Shown here in pieces: positions 9,955 through 64,000 of a stretch of 64,000 nt of DNA (position 1 is the stretch's first letter; each line of letters starts with the position of its first letter). The notes beneath the pieces are model-generated. The model searched no databases. It had not been told where the DNA came from and saw nothing but the letters and a program-made list of their open reading frames with translations. Source of the DNA: Euprymna scolopes (Eukaryota); assembly GCA_053919585.1 (NCBI GenBank), contig CM132815.1; one strand, 5' to 3'. The translations under genes and the position numbers were made by a program.

Positions 9955-9961
9955 ATGTGCT

Positions 9962-12245: not shown

Positions 12246-12291
12246 CCTGTTGTTGTTGAGCATCATTCATGATGATGACTTTATTTCCCCA

Positions 12292-12462
12292 ATATTATTT
12301 TATTAAGAATTCTTTCTAGAATGATATTTGGTACTTACAGGAGGGACCATGTGAAGGTTGCCAACATCACTAAGTGAAAGTATTTCTGTAGAACGAACTG
12401 GATTCGAACTTGACACACTCAGGTTGTCAGTCTGTGTTGTTAACCACTGAGCTACCGTCACT
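12292..12462 (-). mobile_element. tRNA-derived SINE
   Basis: Minus-strand A box TAGCTCAGTGG (~12444-12454) and B box GTTCGAATCC (12400-12409), with an AT-rich tail. Confidence 0.7.
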
Positions 12463-12466
12463 TTCC

Positions 12467-12467
<1 letters not shown>

Positions 12468-12547
<80 letters not shown>
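12468..12547. repeat. Compound (CAT)n(TAT)n microsatellite
   Basis: Direct reading. Confidence 0.95.
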
Positions 12548-12548
<1 letters not shown>

Positions 12549-22900: not shown

Positions 22901-25900
22901 TCGACTGAACCTTCATTTAAAACAGAAACTGCTAAATCGACTGAACCTTCATTTAAAACAGAAACTGCTAAATCGACTGAACCTTCATTTAAAACAGAAA
23001 CTGCTAAATCGACTGAACCTTCATTTAAAACAGAAACTGCTAAATCGACTGAACCTTCATTTAAAACAGAAACTGCTAAATCGACTGAACCTTCATTTAA
23101 AATAGAAACTGCTAAATCGACTGAACCTTCATTTAAAACAGAAACTGCTAAATCGACTGAACCTTCATTTAAAACAGAAACTGCTAAATCGACTGAACCT
23201 TCATTTAAAATAGAAACTGCTAAATCGACTGAACCTTCATTTAAAATAGAAACTGCTAAATCGACTGAACCTTCATTTAAAACAGAAACTGCTAAATCGA
23301 CTGAACCTTCATTTAAAACAGAAACTGCTAAATCGACTGAACCTTCATTTAAAATAGAAACTGCTAAATCGACTGAACCTTCATTTAAAACAGAAACTGC
23401 TAAATCGACTGAACCTTCATTTAAAATAGAAACTGCTAAATCGACTGAACCTTCATTTAAAACAGAAATTGCTAAATCGACTGAACCTTCAATAAAGTAT
23501 TTTGAAAAAAGAGATGTCAGCGATATTGTTGAAAAATCCCATACAAGTACAACTCGGCCATTTACAGACATTATAAGCGTTAAAGCTAATACTACCACTT
23601 TGCCTACTAGTAATCTGGTGCCAACTGCACAAGGAAGCATGACAACATCTAGACCAACAATATCTGTTTTTACTACTGGAACAAGTTCAAATGAGTCATT
23701 AATTGAAATAGTAACACCTTTACCAGAACTCATATCAGTTCATGAAATACCTACCAAGCATATTACAAATGAATCAGAAGTTGAAATTACACAAAAAAAA
23801 GTATCCAAACAATCTGATATACCGACAACATATTCATTATCGCCTGATAAATCACTTTCTATGGTAAAAACAGAGGAGTCCGAGTCGCGTCTATTTTCCG
23901 TCACAATGTCAAAAACTGATTTGTCGACCGAGTTTTTACCTGTGAATGGTACTAAATCTTATACAACATTAACTGAATCAACCAATATCAGTTTTGTAAC
24001 TACACCATCCACAGTCGATTCGGATGGTCCTCTCAGTACATTATATAGTAAAAATGAAAGTATAACCCCAAGATCTATAGAAACATTACCTTCTAGTGTT
24101 AAATTGGAAATTGCGCCTTCTAACTTAACAAAATCTATACTAAAAAGCGAAACACAATCAGCAGTACCAACATCGACATTACAAACATTAAGCACTGCAG
24201 AAGTTTTATTAAAACCATATACAACACAATTAGTTTCCGATGTGGAAAGTGACTCTACGATTATAAAATCTCTAATCTCAAGTACAGTAAGTAAATTATA
24301 TTCAGATTACAGTAAATTAACAAGTGATTCACCATTTTCATCTTCAAATCTGCTATCAAGTAAGAAAAATGGAAGTGTGCTTAAAACAGATATCTTTACT
24401 TTAGAAAAGACAAGCCAGACTCCAAATGTAAGTATCTTATCAAAAGTGACCAGATCAATTGGAAGCAGCCCCACTGAAGATCAAACGCATGGATTTGAAA
24501 CTGACTTTTTAATTTCGCTAACAAAAACTGGTAGTTTAAAACCTTCATTCTTGACATCAAAACCTGTATCAGTGACCAAACTGACACAAGAATCAAGCCA
24601 AAAAGAAATTCATACAAATCTCACACAGCAAACAGAATCCCCAATAATTCTGATCGATTTGACAGCAAAGCCTTATGAGCAAACTGATCATTTGATGATG
24701 ACAAGTAAAAAAGCAACAATTGGCACACAATTGGCACTTGAACCAACAATGCAAAGCTCAAAATTATTAAGTTTGACCTCATCAGAAAAACTTCTGAGAA
24801 AGGATTTAGACAGTTCAAAAGATCACAAAATAGAAATTGCCTCATCTACTACAACTGACACACCATCAGAATTTGAACAGAAAATGTTGACCACAGATAA
24901 ATCAGAAATCCCTAGTAGTAAGAGAACAAAACTCAGCTCAAAGATGGTACAAGATTTTATATCATCAGAAAAAACTTTTACAAAAGATCAAGATGGTTTC
25001 TCAACTGAAAAAACAGTTTCGAAACATGAAAAATTTCAAACACAAAGAATAACATTGGTTACAGACAAAGCACAAAAAGAAATTCTCGCATCTCTTACAA
25101 ATCAAACGGCAGATCTTATAACTTCAATAACAAAACCTTCTACACAACTTGATAGTTTAATGATTGCGAGTGAAAAATCAGTTTTGAAACCTAAAGTATT
25201 TGAAACGGAAACAAAACCAGTGCCGACTGACAGTTCAGATATAGTTAGCTCTGAACCAACGATCAAAAGCTCAAAATTATTACAAGGTATGACTTCACCT
25301 GAGAAAACTTCAACAAAGGATGTGGACAGTTTAATAGATTTCAAAATAGCAATGACTTCATCTACTGAAACTGCAACTGATGCACAACCAAGTTTTGAAT
25401 GCGATATAATGTGTGCTACACCAGCCGTGGAGGTAGATACTTCTACCACTGCTGAAGATCTATCCATTTCTACTCATATTTTATCTGCAGCTGATCTGGA
25501 TGGTTACCAAAGGCAATTGACGTCGATATCAACAATCACGCAACCAGAAAAGACATTATTTACCAAGACAGTTGATTCAACAACTTCTTTATTAAGTTCA
25601 ACTAAAACACCAACAATCGATAGAAGTGCTACATCAACAGTTAGAGTAGATACTTCTGTGGCCGCTCAGAAACTAACCAGCCAAACTCCTATTTTGAGTT
25701 GGATCGATAGGGAAAAACAGGTGACTGCAATACCACATGAAATGACGTCAGAATCAATAGAAACTGCAACAACCAGAAAAATGACACTGTTTACAAAGAA
25801 AGATGACCCAACGACATCTTTAATAAGTATACAAACGAACGAAGTTGATACAACATCAGATTCAGTCTCTATTCCACAAAAAGTCATGTTAGAAAGCGAA

Positions 25901-28900
25901 ATACAAAATACAACAACTATGATGACAACTAATATAACATCTTTTTTCACATCTAAACAAAAACGCATGCCTACAATGGATGCATTTCAGATGCACATAT
26001 CTGCAACGCCTGATAAAAACGACACTGGTGTTCCTCTGTTTCAAACAACAAAAACTGAGGAAGTTGATACATTTCCAGCTTTAGTCTCTACTCAACAAAC
26101 AGACATGTTAGAAAGCAAAGTACAAACTACAACAGCTATGATGAGCACTAATATAACTGATGCCGAACCAACCAGATCATCAACAACTGAAATGAAACCT
26201 TCACCAACAGAGGAGCTAGTTTTCACACAACTTCCCCTTAATAAAACAGTCTCACTACTGTCTTCACATCAAAGCATTTTAAGTAATGCTAGCATGCCAG
26301 TTGATAGAATACATACTAAAGGTCAAACACATCCATTCAAAACTGACTTTGCTGACTCAACAACAATTACAGATAGTTTTAAACCTTCAGTATCCACATC
26401 AACACCTCTAAGTAATATTAGCTTATCAGTTGATACCATTCTTCCTGAAGAACAAACATATTCAGTCAAAACTGATTTTGTAGACTCAACCATTTCAGGT
26501 AGTTTAAAACCAGTATCAACAACTCTAAGTAAGACTAGTTCGTCAACTGATAGTATTCTCATCCAAGAACAAACAAATAGATTCAAGACTGACGTCAAAA
26601 CAGATAGTTCTAAACCTTCGGTAGTCACTTCAACACCTCTACATAATTCTAGTTTGTCAGTTGATAGCATTTTCACTCAGGGACAAACACATACATTCAA
26701 AACTGACTTGATAAATTTCTCAACAAGAACAGATAGTTTTAAACCTTCAGTATCTACATCAACACCTTTAAGTAATGCTAGCTTATCAATTCATATTGAA
26801 TCGTCATCTCATAGTCCCAAACCATCAGTATCCACATCAAAAATTAGATTGACCAAAATGACAAGTCAATCAACAAATACAGACAGTTTTAAACCTTCAG
26901 TATCAACACCTTTAACTAACACTAGCTGGTCTGTTGATACTATTCCCATTCAAGAACAAGCACATTCATTCAAAACTGACCTTGTCGATTCTTCAACAAA
27001 TGCCGACAGTTTCAAACCTTTAATCAGCACATTAATACCTCTATCAAAAGATACAGTAACTAAAATGACAAGGGGATCAACACTAAAAACTGAACTAATA
27101 GACGCAACTACAAATGATTTTACAGATCAAATAGTAAAGAAAGAATTTCACAAAAAATTAACAAAAGAAATTCAGAGTTCAACGACTCTTGAAGGTTACT
27201 TTACATCTTTAAAGTTACAAAATATCACATACGGTTCAACAACACAATCTGCTGAACCTAGTAGTTTAATTTTAACTAAAAAAGACTTTTCAGAATATGA
27301 ACTCTCAAAAACAGAGAAGAAAACACTAACCTCAGGTGAAACAGATTCATTTAGCGCTGAACCAACAATTCCTCATTTAAAACTGTTACAACGTCCGATG
27401 TCATCTGAAAGAACTCCTACAATAGACCAAAATGGTTTAATGGACCAGAAGCTTTCGACAGTTGAGACGACAACAGCGTTCAATGTGAAGCAAAGCTCGC
27501 CATGTGACGTTATGTGCGCTCCACCAGCAGTGGAGGTTGATACTTCGACCACGGTTGGAGGACTCTCTATTCTTACGACTGCCTTAAGCACGGTTGATTT
27601 GGTTGATGTAGAAAAGCAACCAGTTAAAGTGATACATGAAAGCTCATCCAGATTAAAGTATGCATTAACGACTCCATCATCACCAGAAAAAACAACAACA
27701 GGGAAAATTGAATCAACAAAATCTTTGTTAAACCCAACTGTAATAACAGAAACGAAGGCAGGTAAAGTAACTGACATTGATCAAACAGAAACAATCCCGC
27801 TTGAAAGAGAAACTCTTCCAAAAGAAAATCAATATATGTTAAGTAAAGCTGATATATCTACATCTGCACTGACAAGAGATCATGAGTCAGAGAAAGATGC
27901 AACTGAAATCTCTAGTCAACAAATGTTACCTACTGAAACAGACGATAGGGCAAGGCAACTGGAGCGTAAAATAGCTGCAATAGATGCATTTAATGAGAAT
28001 CGAACCAAAGTTCCTGCATTTGAAACAGTAAAAGATGTGTCAACAATTCAACACGACAGAAATGCGTCATTACAGCTTTCCTTTCAACCAACACAATCGG
28101 TTGATACGACCTCATCTGCATCACAAATAGAAAACAAAATATCAGATACAACACTGGCCACTAACATAACTTCTTTATCTACATCTGGTGAAACACTGAC
28201 TCACATTACTGACACACAACTGAGCAGCGAAATAAAAACTTCACCAACAGGCAGGCAATTTGTCACACGAAAATCATTTCCCAATAAAACATTCCAACTA
28301 ACTACTGGGATAAGCATTTCACCTACCGCCCCAATGTCGCCTGAGACGATTCTTATTAAGGAAGATAGGCACGTGACCAAAACAGATTTTGTAGATTCGT
28401 CAACAAGAAATGATGGCATTCACACAAGTCAAACCATAATTTCAGCTTTAAAAGATGATGCGTTAGAAAAACAAACGGAAATTCCAACTTCTACGCAGAC
28501 AAGTAAATCTTTAGTTACACCTGAACAACTAAACATTGAAACTGAACCGACCATGCCAATCATGGCTCAAACCTCCTCAACTGATTCATCAACACAAATA
28601 TCAATTATTAATGAAACATTCGCATTAAACATCACAAAGTCATTTGATTCGATTCTCACTCAAGAGCAAACGCATTCATCTCAACCTGACTTTGTAGTTT
28701 CATCGGTAAAGGAAGACAAGCTAAAAGCTTCAAAACTTATGTCAACAGATATGTTTACCAAAATGACGACTGAATCAACTCTGGAAACTAAACTACCAGA
28801 CTCCAAACATCTGTCAACTGATATAATAACCAACATGACAGAATTGACTTCTATTTCCACATCAAAGTCTCTGCAAGCCAACGGAGTAAGAACCCTAAGA

Positions 28901-30104
28901 AAATTAACCTCGGAAGCTCAAACACCAGATTCAACTATAATAATGCGTGATTTCACTGATCAAACAGTGAAGGAAACCCAAATAGATGAGAAACGAATTC
29001 CACCTTCAACAAGTGAAATTGATATCAAATCTACAATGATTCAGAAGTCTCCTTCAACTGATCCTGTGCACATGACAGAAATACAGTCACAAGCAAGAAA
29101 ACAGAATTTATCGGACAAAAGTATGTATCAAGTTGAAAAGAAATTAACAACTGTACCTGAATCACGTGAACCTCGGTTATCTCATTTGTACACTGACCGA
29201 ATAGTTTCAGAAAGCAAAGCAATGAATGAGACATTAAAATGGGATCCAATGGTTTTTGCATTTTCTTCAACTGAAATGATTCGTTCATCGAGTCGAGGTG
29301 GAATGAGCTCTACACCATTCGAAACAACAATGGTTAAAATGACTACAACGACACCGGCTGGAGGAAAATTAACGGGAATTTTAGAAAAGAAAATGAAAGC
29401 ATCGACACTTAGCACAGATATTACGGATTCTTTAATAAGTGGTTCGACTTTTCTAGCAAGAGACAAAAGAGTAATTAATCAAACCAAAGCACATATTTCT
29501 CAGATTAGTTTACCAGGCACAACCGATCAAACATTGTTGATGCTGCCTGAAACAAGCACAACTTTACCAGTGGGAGAATCGTCATCGTCGTCATCATCAT
29601 CATCAACATCATCTACATTATCATCATTGACAACAAAAACTGGAGTGGAGCCTGGTATGCTTTCACTCACAGATCCATATACTGATCCATCATCAGTAAA
29701 ATTTGTGCCAGAAACCAAAAAGCTACAGACGACAACAACAACAACAACAGACACGAGATCATCATCATCGTCATCAACAATTGATATAAATCTTTTCAGC
29801 GATAAAGATGAAACAAAAACTCAAAGTCAAGAATCTCATATTTTGGAAGAATCAGTATCAAAAGAAGGAATCACTTTAATTCCACGAGTGACAAAAGTTG
29901 AATCAGAATTGAGAAAAGAACTAAAAGACATGAAACAAGAAATGTTGGAAGCGGAAAAAGATTTTATACAAACTGAGTCTGACAAACATATCGCAACGAC
30001 GAAACGTAGCAAAATCTTTTTTGATCCGAGGAAAACTGATTTTATATCTACTCTTAAAACTGATGATTACTTTGCAGATCTAACACAGGCAACACCTGAA
30101 ACTG

Positions 30105-30144
<40 letters not shown>

Positions 30145-33100
30145 GGCATTAAGTCCTGATTGTGATGTATTATGTGCAACACCTGCAGTGGAAACTGACA
30201 CAACGGAAACTGTACCAATTATTTCACAACTGATTACCACATCTACTACAGACAAAGATTTCGAAAAATACTTACAAAAAAGCGATCAGGGGAACATAAC
30301 TCTTTCAACTTCTAAAAGTTTTAGTACTGACAGTAAATTGGCCAGATTTCTCAGCACGGATGCTGATTTGAAATTAATTAAGATGTTTAAAATATATGAA
30401 GAATTTATGACTTTACCTAGAACAAGTAAATCCTTTCTTACGAGATCGAAAATGAAACTGCCTGCCACAGAGAAAATGCCTTTTATCACAACACGCCAAG
30501 ATGTATTACCGTCCATGGAAAAACAACGTTCTAGTATATCCATTTCAGCTGATGAGTTAGTTACTGCAAAAGAATATTTAACAATCCCAGAAGATACAAA
30601 ACCTTTTGCAACCCCAAAAATGTTATTTTTCAAGTCCAGATTATTACCCGCAGGTAAATTAACTCGAAAAGACAAACTTCTTACTTCTTCATCTTTGAAT
30701 GATAAAAAAGAATTGTATGTTACAAGTGACTATCAAGTGCCAACAAGTCAATACAAATTAATTTCTGCAGAGGAAAAATCAGAATCGACTGAAACACAGG
30801 AATTTGAGTTGAAAGATAAAGTCATTTCGACTTTGAGATCATCTTTAAAGAGTCTTGAAGATAGAAAGGTTTCGCCAATAAACGTTACTGGAAAAATGAC
30901 CGAGAGTACATTTACTAAAATGGATGAGGTCAGAAAAGTTGAGCCGATGTTTAAAGACACAAGATTTACTGAGTTGAACTTTTCTTTACCAACATATGAC
31001 AGTGGTTTTAGCCAAACTGTTCCTTATGAAACACCAAAAACAAAGGAAATTTTAACAAGAGAAACATCAAAAGACGAGAGGGAAATTGATGCACGAGAAA
31101 AGAATGAAGGCGAAATTTTATGGTCGGATCAAACAGTGGAAAACAAACAAAAAGAAGATCAATTTTACCGAATGAAAAAAGTGTATGAATTATTTGGAAA
31201 AGATGATAAAATAATTCATCTAAAAAACGAACTGGATAATGAAATGACGACAAAAAAAGTTGATGTGCACGAAAGATCAACTTTGTATACTCATGAAGAA
31301 GACATGAAAACAACCAAATTTGAGAAAGAGAAAGAGAATGTCACTAAAATTCCAGTTGTTCAAACATTTAAAGATGACTCAACACGTGAGAAAGACAAAA
31401 ACGAGTCTTTGGTGTCTACTTTGCAGACAATGAAAACCAATGGAATTCAGTTGAAGAAAAAAACAGAAAATCCAACTTCTATGCACACGGCTAAATTGTC
31501 ATCTTTAGTTGAATCTGAACAACCAAACATTGAGACTGAACTGATCACAAAAATCAGGGATCAAACTTCCCAAACTGGCTTATTGACACAAACATCATTA
31601 CTTAATGAAACATTCCCATTGACTTCAGCTAAAATAACAAAGTCAACTATTATTGAAGACAGAACACATTCATTTCAAACTAACTCTGTAGTTTCATCAG
31701 CAAAAGAAGACAGACTGAAATCTTCAATATCTACGCCAAAACATGTATCAACAGATAGAATAACCCAAATGATGACAGAAGCAATTATAAAAACTCAAAA
31801 ACCAGAGTCAAAACTTATGTTAACAAGTACAATGACCAACACGACAATAGTTTCAAGTCCGGAAACTTTAATGCCAGAATCAAAGCATCTATCAACAGAT
31901 ATGATGATAGACTCAACTCTGAAAACAGAAATACCAGAAACAATGATATATGATTCTAAACAAATGCCATCTTCTAAAACGGCTGAAACATTGAAAACTG
32001 TACAGACAAAGGTATTGCCTACTTTATTCAAGACGCAGACACCTGACATAAGTTCATCCAATAACAAAGTTTATGATACGTTATATGAATTACCAGTTCC
32101 AGAAGAGCAAATAAGAACCATAACTCAGTCAATTATGCCTGAATTTTCATTTAAAACAACATACACAGAAAAAAGTAATGTTGCAATGCAACAAAAAGAC
32201 AAAATAACTTTCCCTAAAATATTAACAGAAAAAATCGTAGATACAACTCAGATTGGAGATATTGAAGAAACCCAAACATATATTACACAAAGACATGAGC
32301 TAACATCAACAATAAAACCTTATAATTTTACTGATAATTTAATAATATCAAAAGAGAAAGAATCTTTAGAACGTGAAATATCAGAACGAGATAGTGAACC
32401 ATTAATTAGAGACAAAGATGATCTTAGCTCTGCTGTAACAATGCCGAGCACAACGCTATTACAAGATTTAACACCATCAAAGAAAATTGCTACAATGGCT
32501 AAAGAGTATCCAACAGATCAAAAGATAGAAACGCCATTGACTTCCAAATCAACTGATGCACAACCAGATTTTGAATGTGATTTTCTATGCGCTACACCAG
32601 CAGTAGAGTTAGATACTTCTGCTGTGACTAGAGGAGCGTCCATCCCAAGTATCACATCAGATAAAGGTGATTTATCTGATTTAGAAAAATTGGAAACTAC
32701 AATGACACATGGTAAGACATCTAAATTAATAGATACATTAACAACACTGATGGGTGGGAAAATGATTTCTTCATTTAAAAATGTCAGCTCAAAAATATCT
32801 CAGCTAGAGGTTGTGGTGAAGCAAACGGCAACAGCAACTGATGCTTTTGAACCGCATTTGTCTGAGACTCATGGAGAGAATTTCACTGAACTTTCAGTAA
32901 TTAAAGCAGTAAAAGATGACTCAACAATACAACTAGATACAAACAAATCTTGGTCGTCTACAACTCCAACGACAAAAATCAAAGATGGTTTTACTGATTT
33001 AGATAAGAAAACAGCGACAGTAAAGGTAGATGCTCCTACTGTGGTTGAAGGAATGCCCATCCGAAGTATCACGTCAGATAAAGTTGATTTGTCTGATTTA

Positions 33101-51100: not shown

Positions 51101-54100
51101 ACCATTGATAAAACTGTTTTGAAAGATGGGTTGTCAATTACAGAAATAAAACCACGTGTCACGGACGCATTAGATACACTTACCACTACACCAATGATAC
51201 AAATATCGACAGAATTACCAGATATAATTTCAACTTTACAAACTTCCACGGACAAAGAAAGTTTAACCATTGATAAAACTGTTTTGAAAGATGGGTTGTC
51301 AATTACAGAAATAAAACCACGTGTCACGGACGCATTAGATACACTTACCACTACACCAATGATACAAATATCGACAGAATTACCAGATATAATTTCAACT
51401 TTACAAACTTCTACGGACAAAGAAAGTTTAACCATTGATAAAGCTGTTTTGAAAGATGGGTTGTCAATTACAGAAATAAAACCACGTGTCACGGACGCAT
51501 TAGATACACTTAGCACTACACCAATGATACAAATATCGACAGAATTACCAGATATAATTTCAACTTTACAAACTTCCACGGACAAAGAAAGTTTAACCAT
51601 TGATAAAACTGTTTTGAAAGATGGGTTGTCAATTACAGAAATAAAACCACCTGTGACAGACACATTAGATACACTTAGCACTAAACCAAAGATAAAAATA
51701 TCGACAGAATTACCAGATATGATTTCAACTTTACAAACTTCTACGGACAAAGAAAGTTTAGCCATTGATAAAACTGTTTTGAAAGATTGGTTGTCGATTA
51801 CAGAAATAAAACCACCTGTGACAGACACATTAGATACACTTAGCACTAAACCAATGATACAAATATCGACAGAATTACCAGATATGATTTCAACTTTACA
51901 AACTTCTACGGACAAAGAAAGTTTAACCATTGATAAAATTGTTTTGAAAGATGGGTTGTCAATTACAGAAATAAAACCACCTGTGACAGACACATTAGAT
52001 ACACTTAGCACTGCACCAATGACACACATATCGACAGAATTACAAGGTCTGATTTCAATTGTACACACTCCATTAATAGAACAAGAAAGTTTATCATCTG
52101 AAAAAACTGTTTCAGCGGATATGAAACTACACACAGAAACTGAAGCTCCAATTATGGATAAATTAGATACATTGAGCACTCTAGCTGCAAAAGAAACTTC
52201 AAAATTATTGCATGATATGATTTCGTATGGAAAAACTCACAAAACACATCCAGAAAGTTCTGTTGATGATAAGATAACAACAGCTTTGACAACAACTCTG
52301 CAGTCAAGTTCGGATTGTGATGTTCTCTGTGCTACCCCAGCTGTAGACGTAGATTCTTCTACCATCTCCGAAGAACTATCTGTTATAACATCTACCACAA
52401 CCAAAGTCGATTTGGCTGATTATGAACAACTACGGATCAACATGACACAAAGAAACACATCAAAACTAACTGATATTTTAACGACACCAATTACACATGA
52501 GGAAACATTTTCTATGATATCAGTCGGTTTAAAGACATCTTTATTAAGCAACAAAACAGAGGAACAAGTATCAACGATTCAAGTCGGAAATGAGGAAGCA
52601 ATTTCCATGGAAACTGATGGCGCATCATTATTAAGCAGTGAAACCAGACCAGCAATCTTACCAGTTTCGTCTGTGCAAGCGCCAACAATTGATAAAAAAA
52701 GTTCATCAACGAAAAAAACAGTTCCAAAAAGTGAGATATCAGTTTTGGAAATGATCACACCATTCGGAGAAAGAGTAGGCAAACTTAGCACTGAACTAAC
52801 TGCACAAATGTCAACAAAGTCACAAGACCTGATTTTGCCAACAACCGATCAAGAATCACTGAATACTTTGACAACAGACAAAACATTTTTAACAACCAAA
52901 ATTGATCCAATTTCTTTGATGCTTACAACTGCATCATTAGAAGGCCAGTTGGTTAAATTAAATGATACAGAGACAACCACATTTCGAGTAGGAACGTTAG
53001 AAGATAAAAAACAAAATGCTGAACAAGATTCACTCGAGAAAAGAACCATCTTTACTCGGAATACAGAAGCTTTATCCACTCAAAGAATGCAAACAAAAGA
53101 ATTTCAAATCCCTTCGCAGTTTGAAAAACAAGCAGTGAATCTCACCAGAGTTTCTGCAATAGAATTAGTAAAAAATGTCTCAGCAATTCCACAGAGCAAA
53201 AAATCATCGGCAGTGATAACTTTTCAACCCATGCAAACTGATACTGTTTCATCTTCTGTCTCAATAGCAGAAACAGCAGAGTTGGAAGACAAAACTATTC
53301 CGACAACAAATATATCAACTTTTGTAACATCAGAAGAAAAATTACCACGAACATCAGATCAAAAGATTTTCACAACTGTTACTATGTTAACTAATACTGA
53401 AAAAGATATGCATGTATCTGACACTGACGTAGTTGTTTCATCAGAAAAAACTTCACTTTCCACTTTAAAGTCACTATCAGTTGATACACGGCCCGAAATG
53501 ATGAAGGCATCAACGCTGGAAACTCAAATACCAGAATCCACTGAAACAACATATGATTACACTGATAGAAAAGTAAAGAAAGAAATACAAAAAGGTTTGA
53601 CAGCTGAAAAATCAATTTCAAGAAGTGAAGAGTCAGATTTCAAAATGAAAACACCAATCACAGAGATATCAAATGCAATCAGCTTTAAAACAGAAACAGA
53701 AATACCATCGCTAATGGAAGATGCGATTTCTTTGACAGTCCAAACTCCAAAAATTGAACATGAAATTTTGTCAATGCCCCAAACTGTTTTGAACAGAGAA
53801 ATATCAACTTCAGAAATGGAAACTCCAGTAACAGATAAATTAGATATTTTTAGCACTGAATCACTGAAACAAGTCTCAGTGCAGTTTAGAGATCCAATTT
53901 CAACAATGAAAACTTCAACCACTGAACATGAAAGGTTGCCAACTGACAAAACAGTTTTAAAAAGTGCGGTGTCCGCTTCAAAAATCGCAACACATGTCAC
54001 AGATGAATTAGGTGGAATTAGTATTAAAGAAACAAAACAAACTTCAGTAATAATAGATGATCTTATATCGACAGCTGATGGAGAAAGTTTGTCACCCAAG

Positions 54101-57100
54101 GTAGCAGTTTCAAAAAGCCCAGTATCAGCATCCGAAATGAAAACACACATCACAAACATATTGGATACACTTAGCATTAAACCAACAAGCCAAATACCAA
54201 TGATTTCAACAATGCAGGCTGCAACAATGGAACAAGAAAGCTTACTCACTGAAAAGCCAGTTTCAAAAAGTGAGGTATCAGTTTCCGCAATAGAAGAGAT
54301 TAAAGACCCTGTCACAGCCACGCCGGACACACTTAGCACCGAACTAGTAGCATCAACACTTTTACAGCATCTGCTTTCAACAGTGAAAACTCCAACAGTG
54401 GAAAAAATAAGTTTATCCACAGAAGAAAACGTTTTCAAAAGTGAGGTAACAGATTCAAAAACTAAAACAACAATCACTGACAGATTGGATGCAGTAATCA
54501 TTGAACCAATGAAAGATATCCGAGCACTGTCACAAGATCTGATTTCCACAGTTCCAACCTCAACAATGGAACAAGAAAGTTTGGCAAAAACAGTTTCGAA
54601 AAGTGGGACTTCAGAAATCAAAAAACATGTTAAAGACATATTGGATGCACTTAGCACTGGACCGACGAGACAAATACAAACACTATTACAAGACGTGATG
54701 CCAACAATTGAACAAGGAAGCTTGTCCACTGATAAAATTGCTTCAAAAACGGAGGTATCAGTTTCAGAAATGGATGCACACATGACAGGCACATCGGATG
54801 TTTTAGTAACCAGATCCACAACACAAATATCCACAGATCCGATTTCAAAAGGGAAAGCACCAACACTGGAACAAGATAGTTCATCAACTAAAAAAACAGT
54901 TTCAAAAACTGTTGTATCAAGTTCAGAAATGAAAATGCACGTCACAGATGCATGGGATACGGTTAACAATACATTAACAAAACAAACAGCAACAGCACTA
55001 AGAGATCCGATTATTAAACTATACATTCCAATAATGGAACAAGAAAGTTTGTCAACTAAAAAAACACATGTGAAACTACAAACAGAAACTGAAACACCTA
55101 TTACCGACGAATTAGATTTGTTTCACACTCAGACTACAAAAAAACCTTCAAAATTATTGCATGATATGATTTCACATGGGAAAATTCCAACAACACATCA
55201 GGAAAGTTCTATTGATGAGAAAATCACAACAGCTTTGACACCAGCTGTAACTGATACACAACCAAGTCCTGATTGTGATGTCCTCTGTGCTACACCAGCA
55301 GTAGATGTAGATTCTTCAACAATAACTGAGGAATTATCTGTGATAACATCTACCACAACCAAAATGGATTTGGCTAGTTACCAACAGGTCACCATGACAC
55401 AAAAAAACTCATCAGTATCAACTGATATTTTAACGACACCAACTACAAATGAGACAGTATTTTCTACAGAAACAGTTGGCTCATCATCATCATTAGATAG
55501 GAGAACAAGAAAATCAACTTTATTGCAAGATGTTATTTCAACAGCGCAACCATCAACAATTGATCAAAAAAGCTTGCCAACAGGAATAAAGGATAGGAAA
55601 ACTGACAGATCGTTATCAGAAAGCGGAACGCATATCATGGGCACAATGGATACAAGCTTCGAACCAACGACACAAATATCAACAGAAATACAAGATTTTA
55701 TTTCAACAATGAGACAAGAAAGTTTGTCAACTGATAAAACAGTTTTAAAAAGTGAGCTACTATCTTCAGATATCAAAATGCATATCACAGGCACATTGAA
55801 TGCATTTGGAAACAAATCAACGTTGCAACCTCCAACAATTGATCAAAAAAGCTTCTCAATGGAAAAACCAGTTTCAGGTTTTCAAATGATCACACCAATC
55901 ACTGAAAAAGTGTATATAGTTGGTTCTAAACCAACAACACAAATATCTACGGAAAGACAAGATCAGATTTCAACAGTGCAAACTCCTACGATGAAACAAG
56001 ACCGTTTGTCGACTGATAAAAACATTTCAAAAATTGAGTCATCTGTTTCAGAAATGGAAACACACGTCACAGATATATTTGATCCATTTAGCACTGTGTT
56101 AACAAAACAAGTATTAACAGAGTTACAAGGTCTGACTACAATAGTCCAAAGTCCAACATTAAAACAAGCAAGATTGCCAACTTCAAAACCTGTTTCAAAA
56201 TATGTAGAATTACAAACTCCAACACTTGAAGCAGAAAGTTTGTCAACTGGAAAAATTGCCACAAAAAATGATATATCAGAATCAGAAACCGAGAAATTAA
56301 TCACCGATAGACTAGAGACACTGAGAACAAAACCAGCAAAACAAACCTTAAAAATATTGCAAGATCTGATTTCCACAATTGATCCAGAAAGTTTGCCGAC
56401 CGAAAAAACAGTTTTGAAAAGTGAAAACACAACTTCAGAAACAAAACCAATAATAACAGACATCTTGTATAGATTTAGCTCCAAACCGAAGAAAAAAATA
56501 TCAACAATATTACAAGATCTGATTTCAACAGTGCAAACGCCAAGAAGTGATCAAGAAAGTTTGTCAACTGAAAAAACAGTTTCAGAAATGAAAAAAAGTG
56601 TCACAGACATTAAACGAAGGACACAACCAATGTTAGTTTTGCAATATCTGTTTTCTACAGAACCAACCCCAACACTGGAACAGGAAAAAAAGAGAGAGGT
56701 ATCAACTTTGGGAATGAAAGCACTTATAACAGGGCAATCCCCAAGAAGTGAACAAAAAAGTTTGCCAACTGAAAAAACGGATTTGAAAAGTGAGGGAACA
56801 ACTTCAGAAATTAAAACACGAATAACGAACATATCCGATATATTTAAACAAACAACACAAATAACAGAATTACAAAGCATGATTTCAACAATTGAAACTC
56901 CAACGATTAAAGAAGAAAGTTTGTCAACTAAAAAGACTTTTCCGAAAAGTGGGGTATCTGCTTCTGAAATGAAAACAGGTATCACAGACGCATTGGATAA
57001 ACTTAGCACCAAACCAATGACACACATAAGAACACCTTTACAGTATCTGTTTTCAACAGAACAAACTCCAACACCACAACAAGAAAATAAGACAGCTTCA

Positions 57101-60100
57101 AAAAGTGAGGCATCAACTTCGGAAATAAAAGCACTAATAATGGACATCTTGGATACACTTAGCATTAAGCCAAGGACACAAATAGGAACAGATATACAAG
57201 ATCTAATTTCAACAGTAAAAATTCCAACATTTGCATCAGCTAGTTTGTCAACAGAACCAACAGTTTCCAAAAGCCAGGAAGTAGGTTCAGAAATAAGAAC
57301 GGACATTTGGGATAAACTTAGCTTTAAATCCAAGAAACAAATATCAACAACGTTACAAGATCTCATTGCAAAATTGCAAACTGTGACAATTGAACAAGAC
57401 AGTTTCTCAACTGAAGAAACTTTTTCAAAAAAGAATATATCCGTTTCAGTAATGAAAACACATGTCACAGACACATTTGATTCACTTAGTACTAATCCAA
57501 GAACACATATAACAACAGATCTACAAGATCTGATTTCAACAAGACAAGCACCAAAAGTTAAACAAGAAAGTTTGTCAATAGAAAAACATGTTTCAAAAAG
57601 TGAGGTATCACAATCAGAAATAGAAACACACGTCACAGAAACACCTAGAAGTAAACCAACAACACAAAGAGCAACAGAATTCCAATTACAAGACTTTATT
57701 TCAAAAGAGCAAACACCAACATCAGAACAAGAAAGTTTATCAACTCCAAAAATAGTTTCAAAAAGTGAAACATCAGTTCCGGAAATGAAAGCACATGTCA
57801 CAGACACATTGGATATGGCTAGCGCAAGGCCATCAACAGAATTACAGGATCTGATTTCGAAAGTTCATTTTTCAACATTGAAAGAAGAAGGTTTGCCGAC
57901 TGAAAAATCTGTTTCAATGATTGAGAAACTTAAAATAGAAACTGCAACAGCAGTTACTGACAAATTAGATAGATTTAGCACTCGAACAAGAAAGCAAACT
58001 TCCAAATTATGGCATGATATGATTGCACCTGCAAAAACCTCAACAACACATTCAGACAGTTCTACTGATGAGAAAATAACAACAGCCTTGACGTCAAGTG
58101 TAACTGATTCACAGCCAAACACTGATTGTGATGTTCTCTGTGCTACACCAGCAGTAGATTCAGATTCTTCTACTATATCTGAAGAATTATCCATTCTAAC
58201 TTCTACCACAACCAAAATGGGTTTGGCTGATTATGAACAGCTACATGCTAACATGACACAAGAAAACCCATCAGTGTCAACCGATATTTTAATGGCACCA
58301 ACCACAAAGGAAGAAACACTTCCTATGTTGTCAATGACTTCAAAAACATCTTCCATTGCAAACATATCAGCAGTACTACAAGATCTTAGTTCAACACTCC
58401 AAATATCAACAATGAGACAAGAAAGTTTTCCCACTGATAATACAATTGTGGAAGGAGAATTGGCCATTTCAGAAATGAAAACACACGTAACAGACTCATC
58501 AGCCATGCCTAGTAGTATGCCAATGATGCAACTTTCAACAGAATTAAAAACTCCAATTCCAACTTTACAAACTCCAACGATGGAAAAAGAAAGTTTATCC
58601 ACTGATAAAACAGTTTTGAAAGATGGGGTGTCAATTACAGAAATAAAAACACATACCACAGACACATTGAAAATACTTAGCACTACACCTATGACTCACA
58701 TATCGACAGAATTGCCAAATATAATTTCAACTTTACAAACTTCTACAATGGACAAAGAAAGTTTAACAACTTATGGAACAGCTTTGGAAGATGAGGTGTC
58801 AGTTAGAGAAATAAAACCATATGTCACGGATACATTGGATACACATCGCACTACACCAATGACATACATATCGAAAGATTTTCAAGATATACATTCAACT
58901 TCAGAAACCCCTACATTACACAAAGAAAATTTGCACACTGATAAAACAATTTTGAAAAATGAGGTGTCGGTTACAGAAATAAAAACACATGTCATGGACA
59001 CATTTGATACAATTAGCACTACACCAATAACAAGCATGTCCACAGAATTGCCAAGTATAATTTCAACTTTACAAACTCCAATAATAGAAGAAGAAAGTTT
59101 CTCCACTGCTAAAACAGTTTTGAAAGATGGAGTGTCAATTACAAACACATTGGATATGTTTAGCACTATACCGACAAACATATCGACAGAATTTCAAGAT
59201 CTGATTTCAACTGTACAAACTAGTATGATAGACAAAGAAAGTTTACACACCGATAAAAGTGTTTTGAAAGATGAGGTGTCAGTTACGGAAATAAAAACAC
59301 ATGTCACGGACACATTGGTTGCATTTAGAACTGCACCAACAACACAATTATCAGCAGAATTTCAAGATCTGATTCCAACTTTAGAAACTCCTATGTTAGA
59401 CAAAGGAAGTTTACACACTGATAAAACTGTTTTGATAGATGGGGTGTCAGTTACGGAAATAAAAGCACATGTCATGGACACATTGGACACGCTTAACACA
59501 ACAGCAACAACACACATATCGACAGAATTGTCACAAAAAAATTTAACTTTACAAATTCCTACAATGGAAGAGGACAGTTTATCCACAGAGAAAACTGTTT
59601 TGAAAGATGGGGTTTCAGTTACAGAAATAAAAACGCGTTTCACAGATACATTGGATATGCTTAGAACTGCACCAATAACACACATATCAGCAGAGTTTCA
59701 AGATCTAATTTCAACTTTAGAAACTCCTACATTAGACAAAGAAAGTTTACACACTAATAAAACTGTTTTGTCACATAAAATTCCAACTTTACAAACTCCA
59801 ACAATAGAAGAAGAAAGTTTATCCACTGATAAAACAGTTTTGAAAGATGGAGTGTCAATTGCAGAAATAAAAACACATGCCACAGACACATTGGAAATAC
59901 TTAGCACTATACCTATGACTCACATATCAACAGAATTGCCAAATATAATTTCAACTTTAGAAACTCCTACATTAGACAAAGAAAGTTTATACACTGATAA
60001 AACTGTTTGGAAAGATGGAGTGTCAGTTACAGAAATAAAAACACATGTCACGGACAAATTAGATACACTTAGCACTACACCAATGGCACAAATATCGACA

Positions 60101-63100
60101 GAATTACCAGATATAATTTCAACTTTACAAACTCCTACAGCAGACAAAGAAAGTTTACACACTGATAAAACTGTTTTGAAAGATGAGGTGTCAGTTACAG
60201 AAATAAAAACACATGTCACAGACACATTGGATATGCTTGGCATTACACCAACGACACATATATTAACAGAATTGCCAAGTATAATTTCAACTTTAGAAAC
60301 TCCTACAACAGACAAAGACAGTTTATCCACAGAGAAAACTGTTTTGAAAGATGAGGTGTCAATGACAGAAATAAAAACGCATGTCACGGACACATTGGAT
60401 ACGCTTAGAACTGCACCAACAACACACATATCAGCAGAGTTTCAAGATCTGATTTCAACTTTAGAAACTCCTACATTAGACAAAGAAAGTTTACACACTG
60501 ATAAAACTGTTTGGAAAGATGGAGTGTCAGTTACAGAAATAAAAACACATGTCACGGACAAATTAGATACACTTACCACTACACCAATGGCACAAATATC
60601 GACAGAATTACCAGATATAATTTCAACTTTACAAACTCCTACAACAGACAAAAAAAGTTTACACACTGATAAAACTGTTTTGAAAGATGAGGTGTCAGTT
60701 ACAGAAATAAAAACACATGTCACGGACACATTGGATATGCTTGGCATTACACCAACGACACATATATTAACAGAATTACCAGATATAATTTCAACTTTAG
60801 AAACTCCTACAACAGACAAAGACAGTTTATCCACAGAGAAAACTGTTTTGAAAGATGAGGTGTCAGTTACAGAATTAAAAGCACATGTCACAAACACATT
60901 GGATAAGCTTAACACAACATCAACGACACACATATCGACAAAATTGCCAAGTATAATTTCAACTTTAGAAACTCCTACACGAGACAAAGACAGTTTATAC
61001 ACTGATAAAACAGTTTTGAAAGATGAGGTGTCAGTTATAGAAATGAAAACACAAGTCACGGACACATTGGATACGCTTAGCACTACACCAATGACACACA
61101 TATCAACAGAATTACAAGATATAATTTCAATTATACAAACTCCAGCAATGGAAGAAGGTAGTTTATCAACTAAAAAAACGCATATCAAACTACATTCAAA
61201 AACTGAAATGCCAATTACAGACCAATTAGATAGATTCATCACTCAAACAAGAAAGCAAACTTCGAAATTATTGCGTGATATATTTTCACCAAGACAAACT
61301 ACGACACCACACCTAGGGAGTTCTGTCGATGAGAAAATAACAGTAGCCTTTACATCAGCTGGAACTGATCCGCAGCCAAGTCTGGTTTGTGATGTACTCT
61401 GTGCTGCACCAGCAATAGACGTAGATTCTGCAACCATATCTGAAGAACTCTCCATTCTAACTACCACAACTAAAGATGGTTTGGCTGATTATGAACAGCT
61501 ACTGATTAATATGACACAAGAAAATGGCACAAAGTCAACCAATACTTTAATGACATCAACTGCAAATGGAAAAACACTTTCTATGGAAACGGTTGATTCA
61601 CCAGCATTTTTGTTAGCCAGTGACACGTTAAAAGAAGATTTGATTTTCACTGAGCAAACACCTACAAAAAGTTTTTCAACTGTAAGCACAATTTCGAAAA
61701 ATGACGTATCATTTTCCGAAATCGAAGCGCATATCACAAATATATTAGGTTCACTTTCCTCTAAATCAACAACACAAATATCAACTCCTATAGCAGACCA
61801 AGTTGCAAGAGCACAAACTTCAACAATGAGACAAGAAAGTTTACTTTCGGATAAAACACTTTCAAAAAGTGAGTTACCATCTTCAAGACAAGAGAGTGTG
61901 TCTACTGAAAAAACAACTTCAAAGAGTGAGGTAATATCTTCAGAAACCCAAGCGTATACAACAGACACATTGGATACATTTAGCATGCAAACTACACAAA
62001 TACCGATATTATTACAAGTCCTGACTTCAACAGTTAAACCACCAACTATGGAACAAGAGAGTGTGTCTACTAAAAAATCAGATTATCAGAGTGAGGTAAT
62101 ATTTTCAGAAATCCAAGCAAATATCACTGACACTTTGGATACACTTAGCACTAAACTGCCAACACAAATATCAACAATTTCACAAGATTTCGTTTTGACA
62201 ATGCAAGCCGCAACAGGAGAACAAAAAAGTTTGTTCATGAACAAAACAGACTTCATACATGAGTTATCATCTTCAGACATGAAAACACATGTCACAGACA
62301 CATTGGATGTGCATAGTACTCAGCCATCTGTTACAGAAAGTAAAACACATGTCACAGACACCTTTGATGTGCTTAGTACTCAATCAATTAAAGAAAATAA
62401 AACACATGCAACGGACGTATTGGATACACTTACTACTCAACCATCAGTCACAGAAAGTAAAACACATGTCACGGACACATTGGAAGAGCTTAGTACTCAA
62501 CTGAAAGTTTCAGAAAGTAAAACACATGTCACAGACACATTTGGTATGCTTATTACTCAACCATCAGTTACAGAAAGTAAAATACATGTCACAGACACAT
62601 TGAGTGTCCTTAGTACTAAACCGTCAGTTACAGATACTAAAACACATATAACAGACGCGTTAGATGTGCTTAGTACTCAACCATCAGTTAAAGAAAGCAC
62701 AAAACATGTCACAGACGCGTTAGATGTGCTTAGTACTCAGCCATCAGTTACAATAAATAAAACACACATCATGGACGCATTATTTACAATTAGTACTCAA
62801 CCGTCAGTTACAAAAGGTAAAACAAATATCACGGACACATTTGATGTACTTAGTACTCAGCCATCAATTACAGAAAGTAAAACACTTGTTAAAGACAAAT
62901 TGGATACACTTCCAACTAAACCATCAATTACAAAAATTAAAACACATGTCACAGACACATTGGATACACTTAGTATTCAAACATCAGTCACAGAAAGTAA
63001 AACCCATGTTACAGATACATTGGATGTGATTAGTACTCAACCATCAGTTACAGAAAGTAAAATATCTATAACGGACACATTTGATGTGCTTCGTACTCAA

Positions 63101-64000
63101 CCGTCAGTTACACAAAATAAAACCCATGTTACAGGCACATTGGATGTGCTTAGTTCTCAACCATCAATTACAGAAAATAAAACATATGTCACAGGAACAT
63201 TGGATACACATAGCACACAACCATCAGTTACAGAAAGTACAACATCTATCACGGACACATTTGGTTTGTTTAGTACTCAACCATCACTTTCAGAAAATAA
63301 AACACATGTTAATGACACATTGGATGAGTTTAGTGCTCAACCCTCAGTTACAGAAAGTAAAACACATGTCACGGACACATTTGGAACACTTAGTACTCAA
63401 TCAACGGCACAAATATCGACTGAATTAGATATCCTGATTCCAACAATTCACACGCCAATGACTGAGCATGAAAGTTTATCTACTGACAAAACCGTTTCCA
63501 AAAGTGAGATATTTATTTCAGAAAGACATTTCACAGACACATTGGATATGCTTAACACTGCACCAGAATTACAAATTCCGATTTCAACTTTACAAACTCC
63601 AACAACGGAACAAGAAAGTTTGTTCACTGATAAAGAGGTTTCAAAAAGTGAGGTATCCGTTTCAAAAAAGAAAACACGTGTCACAGACACATTAAATACA
63701 ATAAGCACTAAATCAACGTCACAAATCTTAACACTTTTACAAGATACGATTTCTACAGTTCAAGCTCCAATATTCAGACGAGGAAAATTTTCAACAGTTA
63801 AACCCATTTTGGAAAGAGTGATATCTGCGGCAGTCATAACGACACCAATAACAGAAACTTTGGATAGAACTAGCATGAAATCAACAGAACAAATGTCCAC
63901 AGAATTACAAGATCTGGTTACAACACAACAGTTGGCGTTAGAACAAGAAAGTTTATCCAGTGAAAAAAACGTTTCAACTGAAATGCTAATGACAGACACA
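16980..64000 (+). CDS. Giant single coding exon (3' partial) of a probably secreted mucin-like T/S/E/K-rich protein, >=15,600 aa
   Basis: Polypyrimidine+CAG acceptor (ttttttttcag|G at 16979/16980). Frame reads PKPNLMLILVFYMLTSKPLTIHS (ATG 16997). Manual translation of many lines from 17 to 64 kb stays in this frame without stops and ends ...EKNVSTEMLMTDT at 64000. The ORF track has no + ORF in this frame, as expected only if there is no stop before the window end. All measured repeat units are multiples of 3. Confidence 0.92.
19235..19812 (+). repeat. Cryptic 19-aa (57-nt) protein repeat, I-x-V-S-L-x-C, 9 units
   Basis: Cys codons at 19310, 19367, 19424, 19481, 19538, 19595 (each +57), then 19751 and 19808 (+57). 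The first unit has Asn at 19253 (-57). Confidence 0.85.
22352..23490 (+). repeat. 36-bp coding minisatellite, ~30 copies (TETAKSTEPSFK)
   Basis: Unit acagaaactgctaaatcgactgaaccttcatttaaa, near-perfect. Confidence 0.95.
25363..26480 (+). repeat. Long intra-exonic duplicated block (copies at ~41670-42520 and ~44165-45020)
   Basis: Near-identical sequence, e.g. cagccaaactcctattttgagttggatcgatagggaaaaacagg at ~25678, ~41725 and ~44482. The ORF track shows matching antisense peptides. Confidence 0.9.
32250..32745 (+). repeat. Duplicated block, second copy at ~38220-38720
   Basis: Near-identical, including QPDFECDFLCATPAVELDT. Confidence 0.85.
33810..35050 (+). repeat. 72-bp coding tandem repeat, ~17 copies (AESSLRTRMPDSKLLSTDTITNVT)
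   Basis: Direct reading. Diverged units also occur at ~31.8, 37.6-38.0 and 40.0-40.2 kb. Confidence 0.92.
48660..49460 (+). repeat. ~800-bp duplicated block, second copy at ~57490-58290 (offset 8832)
   Basis: Antisense ORFs 49033..49383 and 57865..58215 are almost identical. Confidence 0.9.
50625..52040 (+). repeat. 165-bp coding tandem repeat, ~8.5 copies (55 aa)
   Basis: ESLTIDKTVLKDGLSITEIKPRVTDALDTLTTTPMIQISTELPDIISTLQTSTDK. Confidence 0.92.
58540..61170 (+). repeat. 168-bp (56-aa) coding repeat array with a 504-bp higher-order duplication
   Basis: Diagnostic variant gtttggaaagatgg at 60005 and 60509 (offset 504 = 3x168). Confidence 0.85.
62280..63400 (+). repeat. 60-bp coding tandem repeat, ~18 copies (KTHVTDTLDVLSTQPSVTES)
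   Basis: Units align vertically in the 60-nt lines. Confidence 0.92.

What the first reader, a model, noticed from the sequence alone, without database searches (positions are those of the whole stretch)
25400..61430. 14 evenly spaced CxxxC 'knot' motifs (C-D-x-x-C-A-T-P-A-V-[ED]-x-D-[TS]) along an otherwise Cys-poor chain
Seen: first-Cys codons at 25400, 27503, 30161, 32576, 35729, 38552, 41084, 44204, 47009, 49295, 52316, 55274, 58127 and 61388. Spacing is 701-1087 aa (mean ~923). The intervening sequence is built from different repeat families, yet the ~16-aa motif stays conserved with synonymous variation. Established: gel-forming mucins (MUC2/5AC/5B) use interspersed ~100-aa CysD domains as periodic interaction nodes. 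This motif is far smaller and I do not recognise it. Inference: a minimal periodic cross-link (intermolecular disulfide or metal-binding) that sets the mesh size of a gel or fibre, possibly an undescribed polymer architecture.
Basis: partly seen in the sequence, partly recalled or inferred. Interest (0 to 1): 0.9.

Follow-up and report, generated by a model that had tools for sequence, protein, structure and literature searches.

The report
Periodic two-cysteine nodes in giant protein
A cephalopod gene encodes a huge, floppy, sugar-coat-type protein (over 15,000 residues in one exon) whose only cysteines, past its head region, sit in 14 almost identical short motifs about 920 residues apart. 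These look like built-in linking points of a gel or fibre, and no such motif was found in the protein libraries or papers I could search.

Summary
One open frame runs from 16946 to the window end: 15,685 codons with no stop. After residue 1010 it holds 28 cysteines, all in 14 copies of C-D-[VIF]-[LM]-C-A-T-P-A-V-[ED]-x-D-[TS] at the stated coordinates. Base composition predicts about 85 Cys.

Spacing is 701-1087 aa (CV 0.12). No random placement out of 100,000 was that even.

The motif is selected at protein level. Among copies, dN/dS is about 0.2 in the core and about 0.65 in the flanks, at similar synonymous divergence. It is shared by super-repeats whose spacers come from different sub-repeat families.

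Each core is the most hydrophobic spot of the chain (at or above the 99th percentile). It lies in a K/R-free acidic zone of 27-65 aa. AlphaFold sees no fold in module or spacer.

Nothing similar was found in Pfam, the PDB, 1.84 billion representative proteins, 5.8 billion clusters, metagenome DNA or the literature. Contigs from probable RNA runs cover motifs 1-3 with no canonical splice joint.

Best reading (about 0.4): a sticker-and-spacer polymer whose Cys pairs bond in trans. Whether the bonds are inter- or intramolecular, metal binding, secretion and tissue are all untested.

The first-stage scan had separately noted the giant exon and the decapitated lead-in on this same window.

The parts
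16946..64000 (+). Stop-free reading frame of 15,685 codons that runs off the window end. The likely exon start is at 16980, behind a T-rich tract plus CAG acceptor (16977-16979). An in-frame ATG at 16997 opens a hydrophobic stretch, MLILVFYML.
   Evidence: about 1,100 stops would be expected by chance from the base composition
19310..19812 (+). N-terminal 19-aa V-S-L-x-C repeat ladder (aa 789-955). It holds most of the 11 cysteines that lie outside the motifs. Given as context, not part of the periodic array.
25400..25447 (+). Motif 1 core, CDIMCATPAVEVDTST
   Evidence: module HMM score 147; covered by run contigs
27503..27550 (+). Motif 2 core, CDVMCAPPAVEVDTST
30161..30208 (+). Motif 3 core, CDVLCATPAVETDTTE, preceded by a poly-Ser run
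32576..32623 (+). Motif 4 core, CDFLCATPAVELDTSA
35729..35776 (+). Motif 5 core, CDFLCATPAVELDTST
38552..38599 (+). Motif 6 core, CDFLCATPAVELDTSA
41084..41131 (+). Motif 7 core, CDILCATPAVEGDTST
44204..44251 (+). Motif 8 core, CDIMCATPAVEVDTST
47009..47056 (+). Motif 9 core, CGVLCATPAVEVDAAT
49295..49342 (+). Motif 10 core, CDVLCATPAVDLDSST
50414..50620 (+). Decapitated node. A full lead-in (...ITAVLTTVATDRQPSSD) switches to the 165-bp repeat array exactly where the first Cys should be.
   Evidence: (HMM positions 2-70, score 33)
52316..52363 (+). Motif 11 core, CDVLCATPAVDVDSST
55274..55321 (+). Motif 12 core, CDVLCATPAVDVDSST
58127..58174 (+). Motif 13 core, CDVLCATPAVDSDSST
61388..61435 (+). 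Motif 14 core, CDVLCAAPAIDVDSAT

Best explanation
The window holds most of one giant exon of a cephalopod gene. The protein is at least 15,685 aa long, intrinsically disordered, Ser/Thr-rich (30%) and probably secreted and glycosylated. It is built on a sticker-and-spacer plan.

The spacers are about 700-1,090 aa of fast-evolving tandem sub-repeats, and they tolerate almost any amino-acid change except a stop or a cysteine. Each spacer ends in one 'sticker'. This is a short linear motif, C-D-[VIF]-[LM]-C-A-T-P-A-V-[ED]-x-D-[TS], which is the most hydrophobic spot of the chain and is embedded in a K/R-free acidic zone.

Proposed mechanism (inferred, not shown): stickers associate through their hydrophobic face, perhaps once divalent cations screen the acidic flanks. 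The two thiols, four residues apart and so able to face the same side, are then locked by disulfides to the Cys pair of another sticker on the same or another chain. This would give a covalent network whose strands between nodes are about 920 residues long. At about 0.25 nm per residue, as commonly assumed for extended mucin domains, that is roughly 0.2-0.3 micrometres.

Shown here: the anatomy, the Cys exclusion, purifying selection on the core, the lack of a predicted fold, and the lack of known relatives.

Inferred: secretion, glycosylation, disulfide formation and trans pairing.
For: - A 47-kb stop-free frame.
- All 28 post-head cysteines sit in the 14 motifs, with 0 elsewhere against about 85 expected.
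- Core pN is 0.11-0.14 against 0.40-0.43 in the flanks, while pS is similar (0.44-0.46 against 0.51-0.55). So the conservation is protein-level selection, not recent conversion.
- The motif is shared by units whose spacers belong to three different classes.
- The core 10-mer hydropathy lies at the 99.1-100th percentile of the chain. The K/R-free zones are 27-65 aa long with net charge -6 to -10, against a background run mean of 8 aa.
- AlphaFold finds no fold. The module has pLDDT 52, with its maximum of about 70 at the motif; the spacer has pLDDT 35.
- Variants in the spacers are mostly nonsynonymous, 33 against 7, which indicates weak constraint on spacer sequence.
- Hints of the secretory route: NxS/T sequons number 177 against 81 +/- 7 in local shuffles, there is no transmembrane segment, and a hydrophobic N-terminal stretch follows a splice acceptor. 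The nearest language-model look-alikes are mucin-like or adhesin proteins.
- Contigs of three runs (X1 and X2 guessed to be RNA, X7 of unknown type) cover motifs 1-3 with no canonical intron.
Against: - No experiment or homologue shows that the cysteines are oxidised or paired in trans.
- A signal peptide is not proven. The exon start was not checked with reads, and the ATG at 16997 has a poor sequence context.
- Proline is only 4.5%, which is low for a classical mucin domain.
- Intrinsically disordered regions are generically Cys-poor, so part of the depletion needs no oxidising environment.
- Even spacing may simply be inherited from duplication of ~900-aa super-repeats. The decapitated lead-in shows that nodes can be lost.
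- The tissue is unknown because the runs are coded. The one certain poly-A run tried had no reads, and the tool calls that no test.
- The module was found in no other species, so conservation across species is untested.
Confidence: 0.4

Rival explanations
1. Local loop or recognition site. The two cysteines of one motif bond to each other, making a small C-x3-C ring. This gives a rigid, sugar-free hydrophobic epitope that binds a partner non-covalently, for example another matrix protein, a lectin or a modifying enzyme. It could also self-associate non-covalently, as reported for MUC2 CysD.
For: - Seven of the ten core residues that are not cysteine or acidic (positions 0-12) are conserved just as strongly as the cysteines: V/I/F2, L/M3, A5, T6, P7, A8 and V9; position 11 varies. 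This is expected for a binding epitope.
- The core is a hydrophobic island.
- MUC2 CysD nodes were shown to be non-covalent, with only internal disulfides (PMC3195396).
Against: - From my memory of model-peptide work, unchecked here, a C-x3-C ring is one of the less favoured small disulfide loops.
- Total exclusion of other cysteines is explained better if free or exchangeable thiols matter in the assembled material.
- No partner is known.
Confidence: 0.25
2. Metal node. Two thiolates plus the flanking Asp/Glu bind a metal ion (Zn, Cu, Fe, or Ca through the acidic residues). Two motifs may share one ion, as two Rad50 zinc hooks do, which would give reversible cross-links.
For: - Acidic residues are invariant or nearly so at -1, +1, +10 and +12 around the Cys pair.
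- The K/R-free zone carries net charge -6 to -10.
- If the protein were intracellular, metal binding would be the more natural role for the thiols.
Against: - No His is conserved.
- C-x3-C is not a common structural metal-binding spacing outside Sco-type copper sites (my own knowledge).
- No Pfam or PDB match to any metal-binding family.
- Composition and sequon enrichment point to the oxidising secretory route.
Confidence: 0.15
3. Processing or linker site of a polyprotein. The giant precursor is cut at or near each motif into units of about 100 kDa, as profilaggrin and nematode polyprotein allergens are cut at their conserved linkers.
For: A short conserved element at the junction of long variable units is the typical layout of a polyprotein.
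Against: - Only 4 Rx[KR]R sites occur in 15,685 aa, and none lies at a fixed offset from a motif.
- The zone around each motif is free of K and R, so no basic-residue protease site exists there.
- This reading does not explain the invariant Cys pair or the exclusion of Cys elsewhere.
Confidence: 0.05
4. No protein-level function. The motif is kept alike by gene conversion, by a DNA- or RNA-level signal, or by an assembly artefact of a repetitive locus.
For: - Some pairs of copies (1 and 8, 4 and 6, 10 and 13) are identical over about 30 or more residues around the motif, which shows recent block duplication or conversion.
- One contig joint skipping 2,063 bases shows that repeats confuse assemblers.
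Against: - Synonymous divergence in the core (pS 0.44-0.46) is almost as high as in the flanks, while nonsynonymous divergence is 3-4 times lower.
- The motif is conserved between units with unrelated spacers.
- Contigs from independent runs match at 99% or more across motifs 1-3.
Confidence: 0.03

Closest known systems
CysD domains of gel-forming mucins (MUC2, MUC5AC, MUC5B)
   Same: Cys-bearing islands interrupt long Ser/Thr-rich, otherwise Cys-free stretches. CysD was proposed to act as a cross-link that sets the pore size of the gel (PMC3195396).
   Different: CysD is a folded domain of about 100 aa with 10 Cys, five internal disulfides and a WxxW motif, and it dimerises non-covalently. 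Here the node is a 16-aa linear motif with 2 Cys, no predicted fold and no Pfam match. No VWD/C8/TIL or CK domains occur in the part of the protein seen.
MUC16 (CA125) tandem SEA repeats, each with one pair of cysteines
   Same: A giant mucin whose repeats each carry one conserved Cys pair. From my own knowledge, this pair has been discussed as a loop or as a site of intermolecular bonding.
   Different: In MUC16 the pair is about 19 residues apart, lies inside a folded SEA domain and recurs every 156 aa. Here the spacing is 3 residues, there is no SEA domain and the period is about 920 aa.
Central cystine noose / CX3C motif of the RSV G glycoprotein
   Same: A short, conserved, non-glycosylated Cys motif that includes C-x3-C, flanked by two mucin-like disordered regions. 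RSV G was the top feature-based look-alike, a weak one with score 0.67 (papers listed).
   Different: The RSV motif has four Cys with internal disulfides and occurs once per protein, where it acts as a receptor-binding epitope. There is no sequence homology, and here there are 2 Cys repeated 14 times.
Twin CX3C proteins (small Tims) and the Rad50 zinc hook
   Same: Both show that two short Cys pairs (C-x3-C or C-x2-C) on separate segments can be joined face to face, by two disulfides or by one shared metal ion. That is the chemistry proposed here for pairing in trans.
   Different: These are small intracellular or intermembrane-space proteins with helical hairpins or coiled coils. No homology was found, and no helix is predicted at the motif.

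Membership tests
Gel-forming mucins (MUC2/5AC/5B type) | N-terminal VWD-C8-TIL assemblies and a C-terminal cystine-knot domain | tested here: not met
   A Pfam scan of the 2,818-aa N-terminal part and of three later pieces found no such domain. The C-terminus lies outside the window and was not seen.
Gel-forming mucins (MUC2/5AC/5B type) | CysD domain (about 100 aa, 10 Cys, WxxW) interrupting the PTS regions | tested here: not met
   There are only 2 Cys per node and the whole chain has 23 Trp. No Pfam hit and no PDB hit.
Mucin-like (PTS) proteins in the broad sense | Long tandem repeats rich in Ser/Thr (and Pro), predicted to be disordered | tested here: met
   T 17% and S 13% in the repeat body. 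The arrays have periods of 36, 60, 72 and 165/168 bp. The spacer has pLDDT 35. Pro is only 4.5%, which is lower than typical.
Mucin-like (PTS) proteins in the broad sense | Dense O-glycosylation and secretion | not testable with these tools
   Only indirect hints: sequon enrichment, no transmembrane segment, and a hydrophobic N-terminal stretch.
SEA-repeat mucins (MUC16 type) | A SEA domain in each repeat | tested here: not met
   No SEA match in Pfam.
Twin CX3C / small Tim family | Two C-x3-C motifs 11-16 residues apart in a helix-loop-helix of about 70-100 aa | tested here: not met
   There is one C-x3-C per roughly 920 aa. No Pfam hit and no helix at the motif.
Furin-processed polyproteins | A conserved dibasic cleavage site in each linker | tested here: not met
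   There are 4 Rx[KR]R sites in all, none at a fixed offset from a motif, and the motif zone is free of K and R.

The most novel reading that the evidence does not exclude
This is an undescribed polymer design. A multi-megadalton, micrometre-long disordered chain is cross-linked only at 14 or more genetically encoded, evenly spaced minimal two-cysteine stickers. The stickers pair in trans, like a twin C-x3-C formed between chains, so the strand length of the network is written directly in the gene. The family would be restricted to cephalopods or an even narrower lineage.
Probability: 0.3. Interest if true: 0.8.

Novelty: new variant of a known kind. Interest (0 to 1): 0.58.

Why it matters
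If the motifs are cross-links, this protein would be a natural example of a network polymer whose node chemistry is 16 residues long and whose strand length is about 920 residues, both read directly from the sequence. That is much simpler than the folded CysD, VWD and CK machinery of vertebrate mucins, and it can be copied in designed materials.

It would also give cephalopod biology a candidate main component of a secretion such as egg jelly, slime, adhesive or surface mucus. [quoted passage not shown]

The strict exclusion of cysteine from about 14,600 otherwise nearly neutrally evolving codons is a clean case of selection against a single residue type.

Tried and rejected
**Searches that found nothing**
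- Pfam on four pieces: only sub-threshold noise.
- Profile of the 130-aa module against 1.84 billion representative proteins: 0 hits.
- Word-indexed searches with the module alignment, the 978-aa head and a whole 1,087-aa unit: 0 hits each.
- PDB profile search: 0 hits.
- ESM Atlas: only weak look-alikes driven by composition.
- Metagenome DNA pattern scans: 0 hits, then 2 chance hits in GC-rich bacterial contigs L001 and L002 with unrelated context.
- Literature searches for the motif string and for cephalopod mucins, slimes or adhesives with periodic cysteines: no description found.

**Structure**
- AlphaFold of the module and of three spacer repeats gave no confident fold, so no fold search was run.

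**Readings rejected**
- Furin-type polyprotein: no sites at a fixed offset.
- Transmembrane anchor within the window: none found.
- RNA editing creating or removing Cys: no signal. G>A, not A>G, is the commonest difference, and contigs drop rare variants.
- The 2,063-base 'skip' joint as an intron: its ends are TT..CC and its side is only 21 letters, so it is most likely a repeat-induced contig join.
- Absence of variants in motif cores 1-3 as evidence: it has no statistical power, since about 1 would be expected.

**Not achieved**
- Tissue of expression, because the runs are coded.
- Read-level proof of the exon start.
- Any comparison across species.
- The 15th copy predicted beyond the window end.
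Full report
**1.

The + strand has one frame with no stop from 16946 to the window end, 15,685 codons. From the base composition I estimate that more than 1,000 stops would occur by chance. Translation gives 39 cysteines. Eleven lie in the N-terminal part (aa 689-1006, most in a 19-aa V-S-L-x-C ladder).

In the 14,675 codons after residue 1010, position-specific base composition predicts about 85 Cys. None occurs outside the motif, although 1,664 single-base changes would create one.

The distances between motifs are 701-1087 aa (mean 923, CV 0.12). In 100,000 random placements of 14 points, the lowest CV was 0.23.

**2. Anatomy**

The core reads C-D-[VIF]-[LM]-C-A-T-P-A-V-[ED]-x-D-[TS]-[SA]-T. 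Invariant residues are C0, C4, A5, P7, A8 and D12. Several of these codons vary synonymously.

The core is the peak of a module of about 130 aa that can be aligned across all 14 copies at 30-65% identity. A profile of this module finds exactly 14 full copies. Its N-terminal half also gives dozens of weak hits throughout units 9-14, because it is a degenerate copy of the basic ~55-aa spacer repeat. The motif is therefore a special cap placed after every 14-19 or so basic repeats.

The spacers differ by region:
- A 12-aa PSFKTETAKSTE array occurs only before motif 1.
- A 24-aa repeat fills units 3-6.
- A 56-aa repeat and its 20-aa derivative fill units 9-14.
- Units 1, 2, 7 and 8 match none of these.

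Whole units are only 20-53% identical to one another. One lead-in copy at 50414-50620 is complete up to the residue before the first Cys and then switches to a young 165-bp array. This confirms an earlier first-stage note on this window.

**3. Selection**

Across all pairs of copies, the 16-codon core has pN 0.137 and pS 0.456, a ratio of 0.21. The 13-codon core gives 0.19. The flanks have pN 0.40-0.43 and pS 0.51-0.55, ratios of 0.63-0.67. Synonymous divergence is nearly the same in core and flanks, so recent gene conversion or duplication cannot explain the conservation. The constraint acts on the peptide.

Variants seen in run contigs over 24600-30500 are 33 nonsynonymous against 7 synonymous (pN/pS about 1.4). 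The spacer sequence is thus almost free to change, apart from stops and cysteines. No variant fell in motif cores 1-3, but only about one would be expected, so this adds nothing.

**4. Physical character**

The ten core residues have a mean hydropathy in the 99.1-100th percentile of all 10-residue windows of the chain. From +8 to +12 the pattern alternates hydrophobic and acidic residues (A-V-E-V-D). Each motif sits in a zone with no Lys or Arg for 27-65 residues and with net charge -6 to -10. Elsewhere, K/R-free runs average 8 residues and their 95th percentile is 24.

AlphaFold2 with the paralogue alignments gives no fold. The module has mean pLDDT 52, with the highest block of about 70 at the motif. 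Three spacer repeats have pLDDT 35, with only transient helices.

There is no transmembrane segment. No dibasic site lies at a fixed offset from the motifs. NxS/T sequons are about twice as frequent as in local shuffles (177 against 81 +/- 7), although repeat copies are not independent.

The frame opens behind a T-rich tract plus CAG acceptor at 16977-16979. It then reads ...GPKPNLMLILVFYMLTSKP, a hydrophobic stretch of signal-peptide length. This is suggestive, not proof.

**5. Expression**

A handful of runs of the same organism hold both the 5' part and the region of motifs 1-3, while many other runs of that organism hold none. Contigs from three of these runs (X1 and X2 guessed to be RNA, X7 of unknown type) lie on 24600-30500 at mostly 99% identity or better, with depths of up to about 20. 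They cover motifs 1, 2 and 3, and no GT..AG joint appears. One 2,063-base skip with TT..CC ends and a 21-letter side is most likely a repeat-induced join.

The tool warns that contigs in an RNA library do not prove transcription. My reason to accept transcription is that the best holder's contigs total about 129 million letters, far less than I would expect for a cephalopod genome (my own knowledge). Depth 10 on a single-copy locus is therefore hard to explain as DNA carry-over. The one certain poly-A run of raw reads gave no reads, which the tool itself calls no test. The tissue is unknown because the run names are coded.

**6. Comparison with what is known**

The searches are listed under Tried and rejected. 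In brief:
- Pfam, the PDB, the 1.84-billion representative library and three word-indexed searches all found nothing.
- The Atlas gave only weak look-alikes by composition, namely RSV G mucin-like fragments and fibronectin-binding adhesins.
- Degenerate DNA patterns found nothing relevant in metagenome contigs.
- Literature searches found no description of the motif or of a cephalopod protein with periodic cysteine pairs.

The nearest concept is the CysD domain of gel-forming mucins, proposed to act as a non-covalent cross-link that sets pore size (PMC3195396). CysD is a folded 10-Cys domain, and none of the defining domains of that family is present in the part of the protein seen here.

**7. 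Interpretation**

I read the protein as a sticker-and-spacer polymer, a giant and probably secreted disordered chain. The only associative and redox-active sites of its repeat body (after aa 1010, within the window) are the 14 or more motifs. The most likely chemistry is disulfide bonding of one Cys pair to the Cys pair of another motif (about 0.4). Less likely are:
- an internal C0-C4 loop that shapes a binding epitope (0.25);
- a metal site using the thiols and the conserved acidic residues (0.15);
- a processing site (0.05);
- no protein-level role (0.03).

Only the last is close to refuted.

The total exclusion of cysteine from the spacers fits best with a material in which any extra thiol would disturb a defined bonding pattern. 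Disordered regions are Cys-poor in any case, so the argument is supportive and not decisive. Whether the even spacing is itself selected or only inherited from super-repeat duplication cannot be decided from one genome. The decapitated lead-in shows that the pattern can change.

**8. Verdict**

The element is a new, minimal variant of a known idea, cysteine nodes in mucin-like polymers, carried by a gene with no detectable relatives in the protein libraries searched.

Noticed in passing
window 19235-19812 (aa ~770-955): Nine copies of a 19-aa repeat ending in V-S-L-[YHKx]-C (I-x-V-S-L-x-C) hold most of the 11 cysteines that lie outside the periodic motifs. This may be the head domain that polymerises or anchors the chain. 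No Pfam or database relative was found for the 978-aa head.
   Followed up: partly
window ~19910-19960 (aa ~990-1004): An in-frame run of about 15 Lys/Arg (WKKKRKKKKKKKKKKIC), encoded by an A-rich tract, lies between the head and the repeat body. It could be a charged linker, an internal oligo-dT priming site or a ribosome-stalling tract.
   Followed up: no
window 50414-50620: A complete motif lead-in (...TDRQPSSD) is followed not by the Cys core but by a young 165-bp array of 8.7 copies at 95% identity. A node seems to have been overwritten or never completed.
   Followed up: yes
window 22335-23491: A very homogeneous 36-bp array (32 copies, 93% matches) encodes PSFKTETAKSTE. It occurs only in the 1,800-aa stretch before the first motif.
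   Followed up: partly
window 10218-11112 (+), 8879-10441 (-) and 11765-13654 (-): Upstream of the giant exon there are reverse-transcriptase-like ORF fragments (+ strand) and two long ORFs on the minus strand. The + strand fragments look like retroelement remains; the minus-strand ORFs were not translated or searched. No upstream exon of the giant gene was identified.
   Followed up: no
window 40262-41776 (-): A 1,518-nt open frame lies antisense to the giant exon and overlaps motif 7. It is probably a by-product of the skewed codon usage of the sense strand.
   Followed up: no
window 24600-30500: Contigs from three samples differ from the window at about 46 sites in 5.9 kb. Of the 40 sites listed, 33 are amino-acid changing. 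G>A is the commonest change, so there is no A-to-I editing signature.
   Followed up: partly
window 16400-22300: Runs labelled as a second organism (B) and as 'invertebrate metagenome' hold 5-10% of the sampled words of the 5' part. A close relative, or host reads in symbiosis samples, may carry the gene. This could not be followed up because the read-laying run was already used.
   Followed up: no
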